Shown: piece by piece, positions 2,684 to 51,107 of the stretch
Numbering within the stretch: the first letter of the stretch is position 1
Layout: each line of letters opens with the position of its first letter
NCBI RefSeq assembly: GCF_006345805.1
Contig: NC_043016.1
Location: 12,710,001 to 12,774,000 of the forward strand
DNA from: Octopus sinensis
Lineage: Eukaryota
Length of the DNA: 64,000 nucleotides
Direction of reading: 5' to 3'
Notes under the pieces: model-generated
The model's database searches: none
Told to the model about the DNA's origin: nothing
Seen by the model: the letters and a program-made list of their open reading frames with translations, nothing else
Translations under genes and position numbers: made by a program

Positions 2684-33747
<31,064 letters not shown>

Positions 33748-33750
<3 letters not shown>

Positions 33751-33771
33751 CTGTTTGATCCTAAATTGTAA
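33748..33771 (+). other. Candidate stop-codon readthrough extension X-LFDPKL* with PTS1-like end
   Basis: TGA CTG TTT GAT CCT AAA TTG TAA in frame with MDH1. Leaky UGA-C context; C-terminal PKL. Function is inferred. Confidence 0.55.
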
Positions 33772-34088
33772 CCTTGCCTTAGACAAATATCTTGTGAAAA
33801 ATATGATATTTTTAGATATCCTTTAGTTTACACAGCTACATCTTTATAATTTGATTCACAAAGAAAATATTTCTCTGATAAAAAATTAATTTTTTTAAAG
33901 ATTTGCCCTGAAACTCAAGTCCTTAGGTTAAATTTTCTGTATCTGATTCAATAGATTAAGTGATTGTGCTAATTGTTTTGGCAAAATGATGTCCCTATCA
34001 AGAAGTAGATATTTTTAAAATGAAGAATAAGGTATATATTATGGTAAAACTGTTTCAGAACAAGAATCGATCAAAAAGTAAAATTAAA

Positions 34089-34187
34089 AATAAAGAATAA
34101 AACGTTAAAAAAAAAAATGAAAACGGTTTATTGATCTGAAGAATAACATATTGAAATTTTGCTTGTAATTCATGTCTTCAGAATAAA
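34089..34187 (+). terminator. Candidate MDH1 polyadenylation signals
   Basis: AATAAA at 34089, 34096 and 34182, 340-440 nt after the stop; T-rich sequence follows the last one. Confidence 0.55.
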
Positions 34188-35779
34188 TATTTGTAACAGA
34201 ATTCTATACTGTATTCTTGTTTTATACATTACACTTGCACATACATACATAAGCAAATAAATAAACCGTTTTTCCATGCTTGGTTGGGGGTGAGTCTCAC
34301 AGAGACTCTGAGATCCTTTGTCATTTGGGATATGGCAGCAGAGGAAACCAATCTTAGTTGTGTATATGATTTTATGATCAGCTTCCTTTATTTTACAGCA
34401 TAGACTCTATGCATTTTATCATACTACTGGCACTGAAAAGATTGTCTGTGACATGAGTAGATAACCCCTTCTTAATAACTCTGAATAAAAGGGGAAAAAA
34501 AGCAAAACCAAATTTTATTCAGTTATTTGCTCCTAGCTGGTTTGTCTGCTCTGAGACTTGTGCAGTCCATTGTCTCTTCCATTCATTCCTTTCATATTGC
34601 CAACCCCACTCACTGGTCATTGTTCTAAAATTAGAGAAAAGCTTCCGTAAGAAAGACGCGTTAACAAACTTGCATCAGAAATGTCAGTGAATCCCTACTG
34701 GGTGACTTCAACCTGCCTTAGCCTCAAATGGCCAAAAAGACTACCTTCTCTCTGGAATTCACAGTATGATGACAAACAATCTTCACTTGACCTCATTGTT
34801 ATTCAAGTCATTGGAATAAATGGTCCACTGCAGATGCAAAGGCAACAAAAGTAATTTGAAAATTATGATATAAAGGTGACTCTTAGGTTCTTTTCTCCAA
34901 CCACATCATCATCATCATCGTTTAGCATCTGCTTTCCATGCTGGCATGGGTTGGATATTTTGACTGTGGACTGGCAAGCCAGGAGGCTGCACCAGGCTCC
35001 AATCTGATCTGGCAATGATTCTACAGCTGAGAGTGTAGTGGTTGCATTTCACATGCCACCGGCACAAGTGTCAATCAGATGGTACTGGCATCAACCGTGT
35101 TTTTTACATGCCACCAATATGGGAGCCAGTCAGGCAGTGTAAAATTAATGATGTGCAGGCCAAGAGAAAATGTTGTTCAGAACTGCCAAAAATGTATACA
35201 CACTTCAGGAAAGGAAAAATCTTTATAAACGTTTTTTTTTTAGTGTTATCACAGTTTGACAAAACATGGAAAGTGGCATCTATATTTATAGAGGTACTTA
35301 TTTATACAAGTTAGATATTTATACAGATTTTTCCTTTCCTGAAGTGTGCATACATTTTTTTGGTGAACTCTATATTAGCATGTTTAGCGTGAATTCTAAT
35401 GGGAAGAAATTTCAGTTGAGGATGCAAGGGCTGTAATTTAAGGGCTAAAACCAAAGCCGTAGCAAATAGGAAAATGGACAAATCTAAAATCCCCCCTAAG
35501 GAGACGGCCTTATTCAGGATGTGGGAAAGGTACTGGTAGAAACTCCATACAGTGTACCCACTATGGTTGAATGGTTTGGCCAGCTAGGGAGCTGTCTTGG
35601 TTCCATTCGTCTATTTTGGAATGGATGCATAAGAGATGTGGTGTATCATGGGAAGGTTAACAAAAAGGAGCCTTTGTGTGTGACAGATGTGTGGGTATAA
35701 TAAATGCTAAGAATGCACAGAGAATAGACTTCCTGAAATGTCTGGGGGTTCCTTAGCAGACAGCTTCCTTTACCTAGGT

Positions 35780-36630
35780 AACTGAGTAGTGGAGAAGGAA
35801 GTTCTGAAAGTGTTGCTAGAATAAGAACAGGCTGGGCAAAGTTGAGAGAGCTTCTATCTTTGTTGGTAACTAAGGGCCTCTCCCTCAGAGTGAATGACAG
35901 ATTGTATGATGCCTGTATATGTACAGCTATGCTACACAACAACAAAACATGAGTTGTGACTACAGAGGACTTGTGAAGGTTTGAAAGAAATGAAGCCAGC
36001 ATGCTCAACTGGATGGGTGATGTCGGTGTGCAAATAAGATAGAGTGTAATTGTCTTGAGAGAAAAATTGGGTACAAGAGGCATCGGCTGTAATGTATAAG
36101 AGAGGAAACTGCGCTAGTTTGATCATAGGATGCATATGGATGGGGATAGCTGCTTAAAGAAGTGCTAAGGGAACATGTGGAAAATCCAGGAAGATGTGAG
36201 ACAAAGTAGAGAAAGGTCTTCAGACGGGTCTTATTGAGGAGATTCCTGGTAGTTTGTTGTGCTTGAGAAGACCTGACAAGTTTAGTAAAAGTGTAGCTGT
36301 CCATACATATAGGTATATCCTCTACATCCTTTTCTCAGCCCAGAGGTTCTTCCTTTGAGAGCTCACAGGTGCTGCTGTCACATGAAATGCGTGCTAGTGT
36401 CATGTAATGGCACTGTGCCGGTGCCATGTAAAATTCCCCATGCCAATGCCATGTAAAAGCACTCTTGTCGGTGCCACATAAAAAGCACCCAGTGAAATGG
36501 TTGGTATTAGGAAGGGCATCTAGTTGTAGAAGCCATTTCAAAATAGACGAATAGAACCTGGACAGCTCCTCAGCTGGCCAAACCGTTCAACCAATGCCAT
36601 CATGGAAAGCAGACGTTAAATAATGGTGAT
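35780..36630 (+). mobile_element. Decayed RTE-clade LINE 3' fragment
   Basis: Remnants resembling WAKLRELLSLLVTKGLSLRVNDRLYDAC and the RTE 3' tail GCAGACGTTAAATAATGGTGATG. Confidence 0.75.
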
Positions 36631-41814: not shown

Positions 41815-43650
41815 TCATCATCATCATCATCATTTAACGTCCGTTTTCCATGCTGGCATGTGTTGGACGATTTGACTGGGGTCTAGGAAGCCTGGAGGCT
41901 GCACCAGGCCCCAAAATGATCTGGCAGTGTTTCTACAGCTGGATGCCCTTCCTAACACCTCACTTTATTTGCCAGGGTTTTTCGGTCACAGCATACCTCC
42001 AGAGGTCTTTGTCTTTTGTAATTGCCTCTGTGAAGCCCAACGTTTGAAGGCCATGCTTCACCACCTCATCCCATGTCTTCCTGGGTCTCCCTCTACCCCA
42101 GATTCCTTCCACTGTTTGGGAGTGACACTTCTTCACACAGTTCTCCTCATCCATCTGCAGTACATGACCATACCAGTGCAGATGTCTCTCTTGCACTCCA
42201 CAGCTGATGCTTCATATATCCAACATTTCTCTCAGAGTGCTTACACTCTGTCATGTGTGCACACTGACATTATACATCCAGCGGATCATGCTAGCTTCAT
42301 TTCTTTTGAGCCTACGCATGTCTTCAGTAGTCATGGCCCATGTTTCACGACTGTGAAGCATGGCATTTTGCACACATGCATCATACAATTTACCTTTCAG
42401 ACTAAGCAAGAGAACCTTTGTCACCAGTAGGAGTAGAAGCTTTCTGAACTTTGCCCAGGCTATTCGTATTCTAGTGGTAACACTCTCTGAGCATCCACCC
42501 CCACTACTAACTTGGTCACCTAGGTAACGGAAGCTATCAACTACTGGATCAACACTTGGCAGGCTCTCCTCCCCACATTCATTCTCCACGTTGAGCAGTC
42601 TTTCATAATGGCTTCTCCAAACCTCTTTCTTTTCAGAAACATTAAAAGCAAATGCACCATCATCCATGTGAACACATTTCTCTCCTGTGACATTACAATT
42701 ATCTCTCACACACTGTCTTACAATCCAGAATACTTCAGTTCCCAGGTCCTCAAGTCACTGGACATTGGCAAACTTCTTTTCTGCTTCACACTTGGCTATA
42801 TATACCTGCTGCCAAGCCTCCCTTTCTGCTTTCTAGTACAGTTCCCTGCTACCCCCACCCTTCTAGGCTTTCTAGACCTGTTTCTTTGCTCTGATAGCTT
42901 TGTCTACTGTATTATTCCACCACCACATTACTATAGGTTGGAAGGGATTTAGCACCATCCGCAGACTTGGTCTGTGGCACTTGGCAAGCTGTCCTGTAGG
43001 AATTTCCAGCTACCTTCTATGTCCAAGGACTGTAGCTCCTCCTCCCTCTCATCAAATTTCTTGACGAGGATGTCCCTAAATCTCTGACCATGTGAAGGGT
43101 TCTTTAGCTTCCAAATTCTCTTCTGGATTGGCCTACTTCTAGGCATCCTCCTGGTCTCAAGTCGAAAGTCACTAACGACTAGTCTACACTGGGGGGTGGG
43201 GTGCATTCCTCACCTGGGAGGGTTTTTGTATTTAAGAGCAACTCTGAATCCCACTGTCTGGTGAGGATGAAATCAATCTGGCTAGCAGATTCACCTGACT
43301 GATAGGTTATAAGGTGACTCTCTGGCTTCCTGAAGTTAGTGTTGCAGATTAAAAGGTTACATGCATCACAGAACTCCAGTAGCCTAGTTCCCTCATCATT
43401 CTGGGAACCAATACCATGGACTCTGTGTACACCAGTGAAGATACCGGATTTCCATCCAACATGCCTAGTCACAAAGACGAGGTCATTGCCACTCGTCTTT
43501 GAGGTAGCCTGTTGAAGGGTATAATAAAAATGGTCCTTCTGATCATTTGTAGCCCCGCTTGTAGGGTGTAGGCAGAGATAATTGTAGCTGTGCTGTTCTG
43601 CAGGACTAAGGTCCTTGTATAAAGATAGAGTATTTCCAGGGAAACAGTCA
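41815..43650 (-). mobile_element. RTE-clade LINE, internally deleted and decayed (APE endonuclease plus RT C-terminus)
   Basis: Minus translations HGIGSQNDEGTRLLEFCDACNLLICNTNFRKPESHLITYQSG...QIDFILTR, FRYLGDQVSSGGGC...WAKFRKLL and LHWYGHVLQMDE; (GAT)n tail. Confidence 0.9.
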
Positions 43651-43794: not shown

Positions 43795-45000
43795 TATCAT
43801 CATCATCATCATCATCATCATTGTTTAACGTCTGCCTTCCATTCTAGCATGGGTTAGACGATTTGACCAAGGGCTGGCGAACCAGATGGCTGCACCAGGC
43901 TTCAATCTTGATCTGGTAGAGTTTCTACAGCTGGATGCCCTTCCTTACACCAACCACTCTGAGAGTGTAGTGGGTGCTTTTACATACCACCGGCATGGGG
44001 CCAGTCAGGTGATACTGGCAACGACATAGCTCGAATCTTTTACACATGCCACCGGCACAGGTGCCAGTAAAGCGATGCTGATAACGATCACACTCGAATG
44101 GTGTCTTTTACATGTCACCGGCACAGAGGCCAGATAACCACTCTGGCAACGATCATGCTCGGATGGTGCTCTTAATACCCTACTAGCACGGGGCTTGAGT
44201 GCCAGTAAGGTGACGCTGGTAACGATCACACTCGAATGGTGCCTTTTAAGTGTCACTGGCATGGAAGCTGGTTAGCCGCTCTGTCAGTAATCACACTCAT
44301 ATGGTGCTCTTTGCACCCCGCTAGCACGGATGGCAGTCATCGAATTTGATTTTGATTTTGATTTCACTCAACAGGTCTTCGCAAGCAGAGTTTTAGTGTC
44401 CAAAGAAGGAAAAGGTACGCATAAGTGGGCTTTTTACGCCCCTGTCATAGGCCACGAGATTATGGTCTCATTTAGCTTGCAGGTCTTATCATGCAAGGCA
44501 TATTTCCTAAAGTCTCGGTCACTAGTCATTTCCTTGGTGAGGCCTAAAGTTCAAAGGTCATGCTTCACCACTTTATCCCAGGGTGTGGCACATTTTCACA
44601 CAGCTATCCTCATCCATTCTCACCACATGACCATACCAGCGCAGTTGTCTCTCTTGCACACCACATCTGATGCTTCTTAGGTCCAGCATTTCTCCTAAGG
44701 TACTTACACTCTGTTGAGTATGCACACTGACATTACACATCCATCGGATTATACTGGCTTCATTCCTTGCAAGCTTATGCATGTCCTCAGCAGTCATGGC
44801 CCATGTTTCACTGCCATGTGGCATGGTTGTTCATACACATGCATCATACAGTCTACCTTTTATTTTGAGTGAGAGGCCCTTTATCACTAGCAAAGGTAGG
44901 AGCTCTCTGAACTTTCCCCAGGCTATACTTATTCTAGCAGCTACACTTTCAGACCATCCACTCCTGCTACTGACTCGGTCACCTTGGTAATGGAAGCTAT
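43795..45000 (-). mobile_element. RTE-clade LINE 3' fragment with tandem subrepeats in the 3' region
   Basis: GSETWAMTAEDMHKLARNEASIIRWMC...LRWYGHVVRMDE; (GAT)n tail. Confidence 0.85.
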
Positions 45001-49594: not shown

Positions 49595-50030
49595 ATCATA
49601 AGCAGTTGTCTGGAAATGTTATTTTGGTATAATCTACCGATGAGACATGATGTTGCTAGGACACTCTATAATGAAATATGTTGGAAGGATAATCCCAAGG
49701 ACAAAGAAATAAGAACCCACAGTATGGTAGAAGCCATAGCCACTCATAATAAAAAGAAATACTGGAGGAATGTACCAGTGAAGACCTCAATAAAAAGGAA
49801 GCACAACAGACCTGATATAATGATTTGGGATAGAGAAGAGAAATTATGCACAGCTGTGGAAATTAGCTGCTCAGTGGATGTTAACATAAAGCTGAAGATC
49901 AGTGAAAAAGAGAACACCTATACTGAACTATTGAGAAATCTGCAGTTACTCAATCCAGATTACAAGTTCAGGTTTATACCTGTAATTATTGGGGCCCTGG
50001 GATATGTAACACATTGCCTAAATACCAATC
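49595..50030 (+). mobile_element. RLE-type non-LTR retrotransposon fragment (restriction-like endonuclease domain)
   Basis: RHDVARTLY...HNRPDIMIWD...VEISC...KISEKENTYTEL...IPVIIGALG (PD..D motif). Confidence 0.8.
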
Positions 50031-51107
50031 CAATCCATCACTGGGACTGTAAAAATCTGTAAAACTTTCCAGGAGTCATTTAAGTATATATGAGCATGTC
50101 CAGATATGCAACTATATGCATGAGAATACATACATAAAGCAAAACATTCAAATCTACACATACATACATACATACATACATACATACATACATACATACA
50201 TACATACATACGTAGATACATATATACATACATATATGCATACATACATACATACATACATTCATACACACATACATACATACATACAGAAGTACCTTAT
50301 TGTTGATGTTGAAATTCCAATGAAGGAGCTAGGTTAGAAACTGGTTCTTTCCCTATTGGCGAGAAATCTTGAAGCAAAACTGAATAACAGCATATATACA
50401 TAGAAATAGATTGATGGATATATTGATAGAAAAAGATAAAAAGTGCAAAAGTACAGAATACTTTTTAAAAACCTTTCTCTTTTACTCTTTTACTTGTTTA
50501 GTCATTTGACTGTGGCCATGCTGGAGCACCACCTTTAGTCGAGGAAATCGACACCAGAACTTATTTCTTTGTAAGCCTAGTACTTATTCTATCGATCTCT
50601 TTTGCCAAATCACTAAATTATGGGGACGTAAACACACCAACATCGGTTGTCAAGGGATAATGGGGGACAAACACAGAAACACAAATGCACACACACACAC
50701 ACATATATAAATACATATATGTGATGGGCTTCTTCCAGTTTCTGTCTACCAAATCCACTCATAAGGCTTTCGTTGGCCTGAGACTATAGTAGAAGACACT
50801 TGCCCAAGGTGCCACACAGTAGGACTGAACCCGGAACCATGCGGTTCGTAAGCAAGCTACTTACAGCACAGCCGCTCCTACGCCTATAAAATAGTCGTAT
50901 TTTTCGTTCATAAAAATTAAAATTTTCAAAAATAATTGAACTGTACAACATTTCATGAATAACACGGGTGGCTTTGTGGGTACTATTTGAGCAGCTGCCC
51001 ACCCTAACTGCCTGTAAGCCCAAATTTACCCAAACTCAGTTAAATTACATTGTTTTTTGCTGATGCTGACACAAATTCATACTTCATGGAAGCTTAAGTG
51101 GGAGTGG

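What the first reader, a model, noticed from the sequence alone, without database searches (positions are those of the whole stretch)
33748..33771. Hidden peroxisomal MDH1 isoform: UGA-CUG readthrough would append X-LFDPKL, a PTS1-like tail
Seen in sequence: the MDH1 stop TGA is followed in frame by CTG TTT GAT CCT AAA TTG TAA, so readthrough gives ...SVCE-X-LFDPKL-COOH. Established: UGA followed by C is the leakiest stop context, and vertebrate MDH1 uses UGA-CUA(G) readthrough to make peroxisomal MDH1x ending in a PTS1 (Stiebler 2014; Loughran 2014; Hofhuis 2016). PKL fits the relaxed PTS1 consensus (small residue or P, K/R, L) and is a non-canonical PTS1 reported mainly in plants. Inference: a mollusc may use the same trick with a much shorter extension, making a peroxisomal NAD-recycling MDH older than vertebrates or convergent. 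Caveats: CUG differs from the efficient CUA(G) context, and PKL is weaker than SKL.
Basis: partly seen in the sequence, partly recalled or inferred. Interest (0 to 1): 0.88.

Follow-up and report, generated by a model that had tools for sequence, protein, structure and literature searches.

The report
Octopus MDH1 readthrough peroxisomal tail
The octopus cytosolic malate dehydrogenase gene ends in a leaky-type stop codon followed by six in-frame codons for a peroxisome-targeting tail, and the same arrangement recurs across molluscs, a brachiopod and an annelid, so it is very probably real, but it is a new example of a mechanism already described for animal MDH1.

Summary
The last MDH1 exon (Octopus sinensis, 100% identical to XP_029648735.1) ends GAA TGA(33748-50) CTG TTT GAT CCT AAA TTG TAA(33769-71), which reads *LFDPKL*.

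It is not chance. In 16 of 17 animal MDH1 sequences examined, the stop is TGA followed by C (usually CT). A 4-19 codon open frame then ends in [S/A/P][K/R/N/H]L directly before the second stop:
- Cephalopods: O. bimaculoides LFDPKL, Argonauta LSDSKL, cuttlefish-like transcripts LLALESKL, LFSLKSKL and LPTSPAKL.
- Other molluscs: oyster PSPKL, abalone LLGPKL, limpet LFPRL, chiton LTPPANL.
- Outgroups: Lingula ...SNL, Owenia ...SNL.

Tail length and inner residues vary, and the final Leu uses five different codons. The other two frames give no such tail (0 of 34). Shuffling puts chance at 0.002-0.007 per sequence.

The best explanation is UGA-CU readthrough that makes a minor MDH1x isoform imported into peroxisomes by PEX5. 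No readthrough or localisation was measured.

Stiebler et al. 2014 defined UGA-CU as the sufficient motif and reported the cryptic MDH1 PTS1 as conserved in animals down to Hydra. This is a new member of a known kind. The short lophotrochozoan tail and the recurrent PKL/PRL ending are modest new details.

The parts
2684..2686 (+). MDH1 coding exon 1 (the ATG only), followed by a GTAAGT donor
   Evidence: Exact match to the O. bimaculoides exon-1 context AAGCAATC ATG GTAAGT. The spliced model equals P0001.
17433..17531 (+). MDH1 coding exon 2
   Evidence: tblastn with MDH1, splice sites, spliced model identical to XP_029648735.1.
21884..21980 (+). MDH1 coding exon 3
23337..23512 (+). MDH1 coding exon 4
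25210..25332 (+). MDH1 coding exon 5
27168..27344 (+). MDH1 coding exon 6
29988..30101 (+). MDH1 coding exon 7
33541..33750 (+). MDH1 last coding exon up to and including the annotated stop
33748..33753 (+). Stop-codon context TGA CTG (the UGA-CU readthrough motif). TGA+C is kept in all 16 tail-bearing orthologues, and TGA CT in 14 of them.
   Evidence: motif definition in PMC4207609
33751..33768 (+). Six-codon readthrough extension CTG TTT GAT CCT AAA TTG = LFDPKL
   Evidence: orthologous tails
33760..33768 (+). Terminal tripeptide codons CCT AAA TTG = PKL, the putative PTS1
   Evidence: PKL is also the tail end in Ostrea edulis, Haliotis asinina and the unidentified P0130. Patella has PRL, and Argonauta and the cuttlefish-like transcripts have SKL or AKL.
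33769..33771 (+). Second in-frame stop, TAA, immediately after the tripeptide

Best explanation
Octopus MDH1 mRNA carries a programmed leaky stop. A small fraction of ribosomes decode UGA (33748-50), in the UGA-CU context, with a near-cognate tRNA. In human MDH1 the inserted residue is Trp or Arg. These ribosomes then add LFDPKL and stop at the TAA. The new C-terminus, PKL, acts as a type-1 peroxisomal targeting signal read by PEX5. A minor MDH1x isoform, possibly carrying an unextended partner in the dimer, would then enter peroxisomes. There it would regenerate NAD+ for beta-oxidation through a malate/oxaloacetate shuttle, while most MDH1 stays cytosolic. Shown here: the sequence anatomy, orthology, and conservation of the stop context, the frame and the terminal tripeptide across Lophotrochozoa. 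Inferred: that readthrough occurs, how efficient it is, the residue inserted, PEX5 binding, import and the metabolic role.
For: (1) Anatomy as described, inside one exon, so no splicing is needed. (2) Sixteen of 17 animal MDH1 3' ends have TGA+C and a 4-19 codon frame ending in [SAP][KRNH]L directly before the next stop. These are O. bimaculoides LFDPKL and Argonauta LSDSKL; Sepia esculenta LLALESKL and three other cephalopod-like transcripts LLTLESKL, LPTSPAKL and LFSLKSKL; Ostrea PSPKL, Haliotis LLGPKL and Liolophura LTPPANL; Patella LFPRL, Lingula LVNKMSNL and Owenia RVTSNL; and three metatranscriptome MDH1s ending in SHL, SNL and SKL. (3) The signature is at protein level. Tail length varies from 4 to 19 codons and inner residues vary freely. 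The last residue is always Leu, encoded by TTG, TTA, CTC, CTT or CTA, and Lys is encoded by AAA or AAG. (4) The other two frames give 0 of 34 PTS1-like ends, and shuffles give 0.1-0.7% per sequence. (5) The third base of the first tail codon varies (CTG, CTT, CTA) while C and T are kept, as expected if the UGA-CU motif is what is selected (motif in PMC4207609). (6) Published precedent: human MDH1x shows about 4% readthrough, has a functional PTS1 and incorporates Trp or Arg (PMC5133446), and the cryptic MDH1 PTS1 was reported as conserved in animals down to Hydra. (7) PKL sits on vertebrate IDH1 orthologues where human IDH1 has AKL, and chicken PKL scores +1.3 in the PTS1 predictor.
Against: There is no experimental evidence for octopus: no Ribo-seq, no mass spectrometry, no reporter and no localisation. 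The +6 base is G, not the A that gives the highest readthrough, so efficiency may be well below the human 4%. Pro at -3 lies outside the canonical [SAC] set, and Asp at -4 (LFD-PKL) is acidic, whereas basic upstream residues usually help PTS1. Within octopods the first ~70 nt of the 3'UTR are also well conserved at nucleotide level, so the octopod comparison alone does not separate coding from RNA-level constraint. The argument rests on the wider comparisons. One animal-like MDH1 transcript (L021) has TAA and no PTS1 tail, so the feature is not universal.
Confidence: 0.8

Rival explanations
1. Relic or weak signal in Octopus. The readthrough PTS1 is ancestral and functional in relatives with SKL or AKL. 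In Octopus sinensis and O. bimaculoides it has drifted to a poor signal (PKL after an acidic residue, CUG context) and contributes little or no peroxisomal MDH.
For: Argonauta and the decapodiform-like transcripts have SKL or AKL, whereas Octopus has PKL. The +6 base is G rather than A. Asp sits at -4.
Against: PKL recurs independently of the inner tail sequence in oyster, abalone and P0130, and PRL in limpet. This argues that Pro at -3 is tolerated or even favoured in molluscs. The frame, the UGA-CU motif and the immediately following stop are all intact and identical in two Octopus species. PKL is the C-terminus of zebrafish and chicken IDH1, which are taken to be peroxisomal.
Confidence: 0.1
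2. RNA editing rather than ribosomal readthrough. In coleoid cephalopods, ADAR converts the A of UGA to inosine, which is read as UGG (Trp). The stop is removed on a fraction of mRNAs and this produces MDH1-W-LFDPKL.
For: Coleoids recode mRNAs extensively by A-to-I editing (general knowledge). UGA is one edit away from a Trp codon. Two database ORFs in the cuttlefish-like cluster show W at the stop position (P0125 and P0126).
Against: The same TGA-C plus tail arrangement is kept in oyster, abalone, limpet, chiton, Lingula and Owenia, which are not known for mass recoding. The W-ORFs start at the internal Met of the last exon, and one lies on a 240-kb genomic contig, so they are DNA and not edited RNA. 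Similar W-at-stop ORFs appear in unrelated taxa, and one has a second W in a junk tail. This points to gene calling with a UGA=Trp table. Exact look-ups of five full-length cephalopod MDH1+W+tail proteins found nothing, while the TGA-terminated cuttlefish protein is listed in 99 blocks of the collection; the five transcript contigs examined for P0005 and its close relative P0006 (L003-L007) all carry TGA. A 5' G neighbour is the least favoured for ADAR (own knowledge). No stable local RNA structure is predicted (z = -0.5).
Confidence: 0.04
3. Chance, or an untranslated 3'UTR element. The tail is never translated, and the similarity among species reflects RNA-level conservation or coincidence.
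For: The proximal 3'UTR is conserved at nucleotide level among octopods. A single PTS1-like tail occurs by chance at about 0.3%.
Against: Outside octopods the tails cannot be aligned at nucleotide level and differ in length. They still always end in xK/R/N-L plus a stop, with synonymous Leu and Lys codons. The pattern is found only in frame 0: 16 of 17 there, against 0 of 34 in the other frames. TGA+C is invariant in the 16.
Confidence: 0.03
4. Selenocysteine insertion at the UGA.
For: UGA is the Sec codon.
Against: No Rfam family reached its gathering score anywhere in the window, and no SECIS match was found at E<=5 in the 2.8 kb downstream of the stop. MDH1 is not a known selenoprotein. The vertebrate and fungal precedents use near-cognate tRNAs.
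Confidence: 0.01

Closest known systems
Vertebrate MDH1x (readthrough-extended cytosolic malate dehydrogenase; Stiebler et al. 2014, PMC4207609; Hofhuis et al. 2016, PMC5133446)
   Same: It is the orthologous gene. Both have a UGA stop followed by CU, an in-frame extension whose last three residues form a PTS1 directly before a second stop, and conservation of the stop context together with the tripeptide.
   Different: The octopus extension is 6 codons, against about 19 in vertebrates. The tripeptide is PKL, against CRL in mammals and SRL in other vertebrates. The context is CUG rather than CUA-G. The tails cannot be aligned with each other. Nothing has been tested experimentally in any mollusc.
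Animal-wide cryptic PTS1 of MDH1 (Stiebler et al. 2014, Fig. [quoted passage not shown]
   Same: My lophotrochozoan series fits it.
   Different: The figure is not held, so I could not see whether any mollusc was listed for MDH1. No full-text paper combines readthrough, peroxisome, PTS1 and mollusc. The cephalopod, bivalve, chiton, brachiopod and annelid tails listed here, and the recurrent Pro at -3, may therefore be new detail.
Readthrough PTS1 of NADP-isocitrate dehydrogenase in insects and the mollusc Aplysia (Stiebler 2014, Fig. S3)
   Same: TGA CTA followed by a short tail ending in SKL, ARL or SHL. This shows that a mollusc uses the same device on another redox-shuttle enzyme.
   Different: It is a different enzyme (NADPH shuttle), and the Aplysia tail is longer (N16-SKL).
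LDHBx (mammalian lactate dehydrogenase B readthrough; Schueren et al. 2014, PMC4359377)
   Same: UGA-CUA-G readthrough exposes a hidden PTS1 on an NAD-dependent dehydrogenase, and unextended subunits are imported piggyback.
   Different: It is restricted to mammals and concerns a different enzyme.
Fungal cryptic PTS1 by readthrough or alternative splicing (Freitag 2012, cited in PMC4207609); yeast Mdh3 and plant pMDH
   Same: They meet the same need, a peroxisomal NAD(H) shuttle dehydrogenase. Fungal PGK, Art1 and Rpe1 use UGA-CU readthrough.
   Different: Yeast Mdh3 is a separate gene with a constitutive PTS1, and Yarrowia uses splicing. That plant pMDH uses a PTS2 is from my own knowledge. 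These enzymes are not orthologous.

Membership tests
MDH1x-type functional translational readthrough (hidden PTS1 on cytosolic MDH1) | The gene is the orthologue of cytosolic NAD-malate dehydrogenase (MDH1) | tested here: met
   tblastn with MDH1 finds 7 exons at 47-82% identity. The spliced model is 100% identical to 'malate dehydrogenase, cytoplasmic [Octopus sinensis]' and carries Pfam Ldh_1_N and Ldh_1_C.
MDH1x-type functional translational readthrough (hidden PTS1 on cytosolic MDH1) | UGA stop followed by the dinucleotide CU (the minimal motif of Stiebler 2014) | tested here: met
   TGA CTG at 33748-33753. TGA CT is kept in 14 of the 16 tail-bearing orthologues, and TGA C in all 16.
MDH1x-type functional translational readthrough (hidden PTS1 on cytosolic MDH1) | Full high-readthrough context UGA CUA G (Loughran 2014, Schueren 2014) | tested here: not met
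   Octopus has CUG U. The bases at +6 and +7 differ. This context defines the most efficient subclass, not the minimal motif.
MDH1x-type functional translational readthrough (hidden PTS1 on cytosolic MDH1) | The in-frame extension ends in a PTS1 tripeptide directly before the next stop | tested here: inconclusive
   The tail ends PKL-TAA. K and L are canonical. Pro at -3 lies outside [SAC] but occurs as the C-terminus of zebrafish and chicken IDH1 and in three other mollusc-type MDH1 tails. No PTS1 predictor or binding test was available.
MDH1x-type functional translational readthrough (hidden PTS1 on cytosolic MDH1) | Stop context, open frame and tripeptide conserved among related species, with a coding-type substitution pattern | tested here: met
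   Sixteen of 17 animal MDH1 3' ends match, the other frames give 0 of 34, and the terminal Leu uses 5 synonymous codons.
MDH1x-type functional translational readthrough (hidden PTS1 on cytosolic MDH1) | Measured readthrough above background (reporter, Ribo-seq or extension peptide by mass spectrometry) | not testable with these tools
   No expression, ribosome-profiling or proteomic data were accessible.
MDH1x-type functional translational readthrough (hidden PTS1 on cytosolic MDH1) | PEX5-dependent peroxisomal localisation of the extended isoform | not testable with these tools
   This needs cell biology or binding assays.
Selenoprotein (UGA = Sec) | A SECIS element in the 3'UTR | tested here: not met
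   No Rfam hit at gathering score in the window. No SECIS match at E<=5 in 33600-36600.

The most novel reading that the evidence does not exclude
Molluscs (and possibly lophotrochozoans generally) may keep a deliberately short and weak PTS1 on MDH1x. The recurrent Pro at -3 (PKL/PRL) could reflect a lineage-specific PEX5 preference or a tuning of dual localisation. In coleoid cephalopods, A-to-I editing of the UGA to UGG might add a tissue-specific route to the same isoform. My evidence excludes neither idea, and the editing part is unlikely.
Probability: 0.12. Interest if true: 0.6.

Novelty: new member of a known kind. Interest (0 to 1): 0.3.

Why it matters
Peroxisomal beta-oxidation needs NAD+ regenerated inside an organelle whose membrane NAD(H) cannot cross, and animals have no dedicated peroxisomal MDH gene. 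The octopus locus and the series assembled here show that one device, a UGA-C(U) stop plus a minimal tail ending in a PTS1, is kept on MDH1 across four mollusc classes, a brachiopod and an annelid. This supports the published view that MDH1x is an old, animal-wide solution rather than a vertebrate peculiarity. For genome annotation, mollusc MDH1 genes should carry a readthrough isoform, as zebrafish Mdh1x already does in RefSeq. For peroxisome biology, the 4-8 residue tails with PKL, PRL, ANL or SNL endings give a natural panel of minimal, weak PTS1 signals to test. The principle itself is not new.

Tried and rejected
(1) Selenocysteine. No SECIS or any other Rfam family was found at gathering score in the window, and no SECIS match was found at E<=5 downstream of the stop. 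Rejected.

(2) A stimulatory RNA structure after the stop. The fold of 33739-33860 is no better than shuffles (z = -0.5), so there is no support. Human MDH1 does not need one either.

(3) RNA editing of the stop. Exact look-ups of five cephalopod MDH1+W+tail proteins found nothing. W-at-stop ORFs do exist (P0125, P0126, P0130, P0138, P0141, P0148, P0151, P0152). They are last-exon ORFs, at least two of them on contigs over 200 kb. They occur in unrelated taxa, and one has a second W in a non-conserved tail. I read them as products of a gene caller using a UGA=Trp table.

(4) The JGI metagenome scan for more MDH1 transcripts returned mostly bacterial MDH genes. Only about six eukaryote-like transcripts were usable.

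(5) Naming the Logan runs. Only SRR20545813 could be tied to a species, Sepia esculenta. The others are called 'cephalopod-like' on the basis of 76% identity and shared C-terminal and 3'UTR features.

(6) Octopod-only nucleotide conservation cannot separate coding from RNA-level constraint, because the neighbouring 3'UTR is conserved too.

(7) A Pfam scan of six long non-MDH ORFs in the window gave nothing meaningful.

Full report
**Observation.**
The window at 33739-33771 reads GTT TGT GAA TGA CTG TTT GAT CCT AAA TTG TAA. In the frame of the exon that starts at 33541 it translates to ...[17 protein letters not shown]. The other two frames are closed.

**What gene it is.**
- All seven have AG/GT borders.
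- The one-codon first exon (ATG at 2684-2686, then GTAAGT) was located through the O. bimaculoides orthologue.
- The eight exons splice to 999 nt, and the product is identical to XP_029648735.1, 'malate dehydrogenase, cytoplasmic [Octopus sinensis]'.
- The window is therefore Octopus sinensis DNA, or a near-identical relative. The O. vulgaris protein differs from it at one residue.
- The stop and the tail lie in the same exon, so no splicing event is needed or possible to join them.

**Is it more than chance?**
For one sequence the case is only moderate. Shuffling the 150 nt after the stop gives a PTS1-like end on the first in-frame ORF in 0.24% (strict) to 0.36% (relaxed) of trials.

| Source | Stop and first codon | Tail |
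|---|---|---|
| O. bimaculoides | TGA CTG | LFDPKL |
| Argonauta hians | TGA CTG | LSDSKL |
| Sepia esculenta RNA-seq (SRR20545813; PMC10466719) | TGA CTT | LLALESKL |
| Three more cephalopod-like transcripts | TGA CTT | LLTLESKL, LPTSPAKL, LFSLKSKL |
| Ostrea edulis | TGA CCT | PSPKL |
| Haliotis asinina | TGA CTA | LLGPKL |
| Chiton Liolophura sinensis | TGA CTA | LTPPANL |
| Patella vulgata | TGA CTA | LFPRL |
| Brachiopod Lingula anatina | TGA CTT | LVNKMSNL |
| Annelid Owenia fusiformis | TGA CGG | RVTSNL |
| Three animal-like metatranscriptome MDH1s | TGA CTA or CTT | ...SHL, LSNL, LEESKL |
| A fourth metatranscriptome MDH1 (L021) | TAA | no such tail |

- Sixteen of the 17 sequences end the post-stop frame in [S/A/P][K/R/N/H]L immediately before the next stop.
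- The other two frames do so in 0 of 34 cases.
- The pattern is of protein-coding type. Tail length ranges from 4 to 19 codons and the inner residues are free.
- The last residue is always Leu, encoded by five different codons (TTA 5, CTC 5, CTT 3, TTG 2, CTA 1). Lys is encoded by AAA or AAG.
- The first stop is always TGA followed by C, and by CT in 14 of the 16. The third base of that codon is free (CTT 6, CTA 5, CTG 3), as expected if the nucleotides UGA-CU are what is selected.
- Within octopods the neighbouring 3'UTR is also conserved, so the weight of the argument lies on the cross-class comparisons. There the nucleotide sequences cannot be aligned, yet the tripeptide and the stop persist.

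**Mechanism.**
The best-supported reading is programmed translational readthrough. The steps below are inferred for octopus and were not shown here.
- Stiebler et al. 2014 showed in Ustilago and in HeLa cells that UGA followed by CU is sufficient for efficient readthrough. An A at the next position stimulates it further (PMC4207609).
- Human MDH1 is read through at about 3.5-4%, with Trp or Arg inserted. Its extension carries a functional PTS1 (PMC4132726; PMC5133446).
- By analogy, a small share of octopus MDH1 would end in ...SVCE-(W/R)-LFDPKL. PEX5 would bind it and import it into peroxisomes, possibly with an unextended partner subunit.
- Inside the peroxisome it would re-oxidise the NADH made by beta-oxidation.
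- PKL is a non-canonical but plausible PTS1 in animals. Zebrafish and chicken IDH1 end in PKL where human IDH1 ends in AKL, and the chicken signal scores +1.3 in the PTS1 predictor.
- In my series Pro at -3 recurs in Octopus, Ostrea, Haliotis, Patella (PRL) and an unidentified genomic ORF (P0130...QYTVPKL).

**Rivals.**
- Selenocysteine. No Rfam family reached its gathering score in the window, and no SECIS match appeared at E<=5 downstream of the stop.
- A downstream stimulatory RNA structure. The local fold is no better than shuffles (z = -0.5).
- A-to-I editing of UGA to UGG, which is attractive in a coleoid.
  - Against it, the device is kept in oyster, abalone, limpet, chiton, Lingula and Owenia.
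  - Five exact look-ups of full-length MDH1+W+tail proteins found nothing, while the TGA-terminated cuttlefish protein is listed in 99 blocks of the collection.
  - The edited A would have a 5' G, which ADARs disfavour (own knowledge).
  - Database ORFs that do show W at the stop (P0125, P0126, P0130, P0138, P0141, P0148, P0151, P0152) are last-exon ORFs, at least two of them on contigs over 200 kb. They come from unrelated taxa, and one has a second W in a junk tail.
  - I take them to be gene calls made with a UGA=Trp table. I could not fetch their DNA to prove it.
- The Octopus tail as a weakened relic (CUG context, Pro at -3, Asp at -4). This cannot be excluded without experiments. The intact frame and the independent recurrence of PKL argue against it.

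**Comparison with what is known.**
- This is the orthologue of vertebrate MDH1x and works like it.
- It differs in tail length (6 codons against about 19), in the tripeptide (PKL against CRL or SRL) and in the bases at +6 and +7.
- The idea that it predates vertebrates is already published. [quoted passage not shown] - The same authors listed a readthrough PTS1 on Aplysia IDH (Fig. S3).
- The figure itself is not held, so I cannot say whether a mollusc MDH1 was shown.
- No full-text paper combines readthrough, peroxisome, PTS1 and mollusc. None treats cephalopod MDH1 readthrough.

**Verdict.**
- The novelty claim is largely pre-empted, so I file it as a new member of a known kind.
- The modest new content is the explicit lophotrochozoan series of very short tails and the recurrent Pro at -3.
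- Interest is 0.3. Confidence that the octopus tail is a functional readthrough PTS1 is 0.8.

Noticed in passing
Proteins P0125, P0126, P0130, P0138, P0141, P0148, P0151, P0152: The protein collection holds last-exon MDH1 ORFs that read W at the TGA stop and continue into the tail, for example ...SVCAWLLTLESKL...SVCAWLPSAKL and ...KVCAWQYTVPKL. They most likely come from a gene caller that used a UGA=Trp table on AT-rich eukaryotic contigs, since P0148 has a second W in a junk tail. They reveal further hidden tails, but they should not be read as evidence of TGG or of RNA editing.
   Followed up: partly
Proteins P0138, P0151, P0152, P0141: A group of MDH1 last exons ending ...EAMAVCSA is possibly from arthropods, but the taxon is unknown. 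After the stop position they have W-G/S-(Y/H)..., that is UGA followed by G or A rather than C. Their 12-23 residue tails end in SQL three times and in SHI once. A conserved SQL tail behind a non-CU context would be a different readthrough context on the same enzyme.
   Followed up: no
window 2687-17432: Intron 1 of MDH1 is about 14.7 kb and separates an exon whose coding part is only the ATG from exon 2. It is largely alignable with O. bimaculoides at 84-93% identity.
   Followed up: partly
window 23232-23322: A (TTA)n microsatellite of about 30 copies sits 14 nt upstream of the exon 4 acceptor site of MDH1 and effectively forms part of its pyrimidine/AT tract.
   Followed up: no
window 24646-24882 and 43982-44329: Related tandem units of about 63-66 bp (consensus GCCAGT(C/A)AAGCGACACTGGCAACGA(C/T)CAC(G/A)CTC(A/G)AATGGTG...) lie in MDH1 intron 4 and again 10 kb downstream of the gene. 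The megablast comparison places copies at non-syntenic positions in O. bimaculoides, so this is probably an interspersed octopus repeat.
   Followed up: no
window 42251-42709 (-), 49616-50062 (+), 57814-58215 (+), 58573-58911 (-): These ORFs of 112-152 aa look by eye like fragments of retroelement or transposase proteins. The GC-richer stretch at 42-44 kb coincides with the first one. None matched Pfam at E<=0.01, apart from a spurious low-complexity hit.
   Followed up: partly
window 35198-35347 (-): A weak sub-threshold match to microRNA precursor models (mir-3688 at 34 bits against a gathering score of 84, and mir-1277) lies 1.4 kb downstream of the MDH1 stop. It is probably just an AT-rich hairpin.
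   Followed up: no
L021 (JGI Ga0247647_1003336): One animal-like MDH1 transcript (65% identity) ends in TAA ATA and has no PTS1-like tail. The readthrough tail is therefore not universal among MDH1 genes of this type.
   Followed up: no
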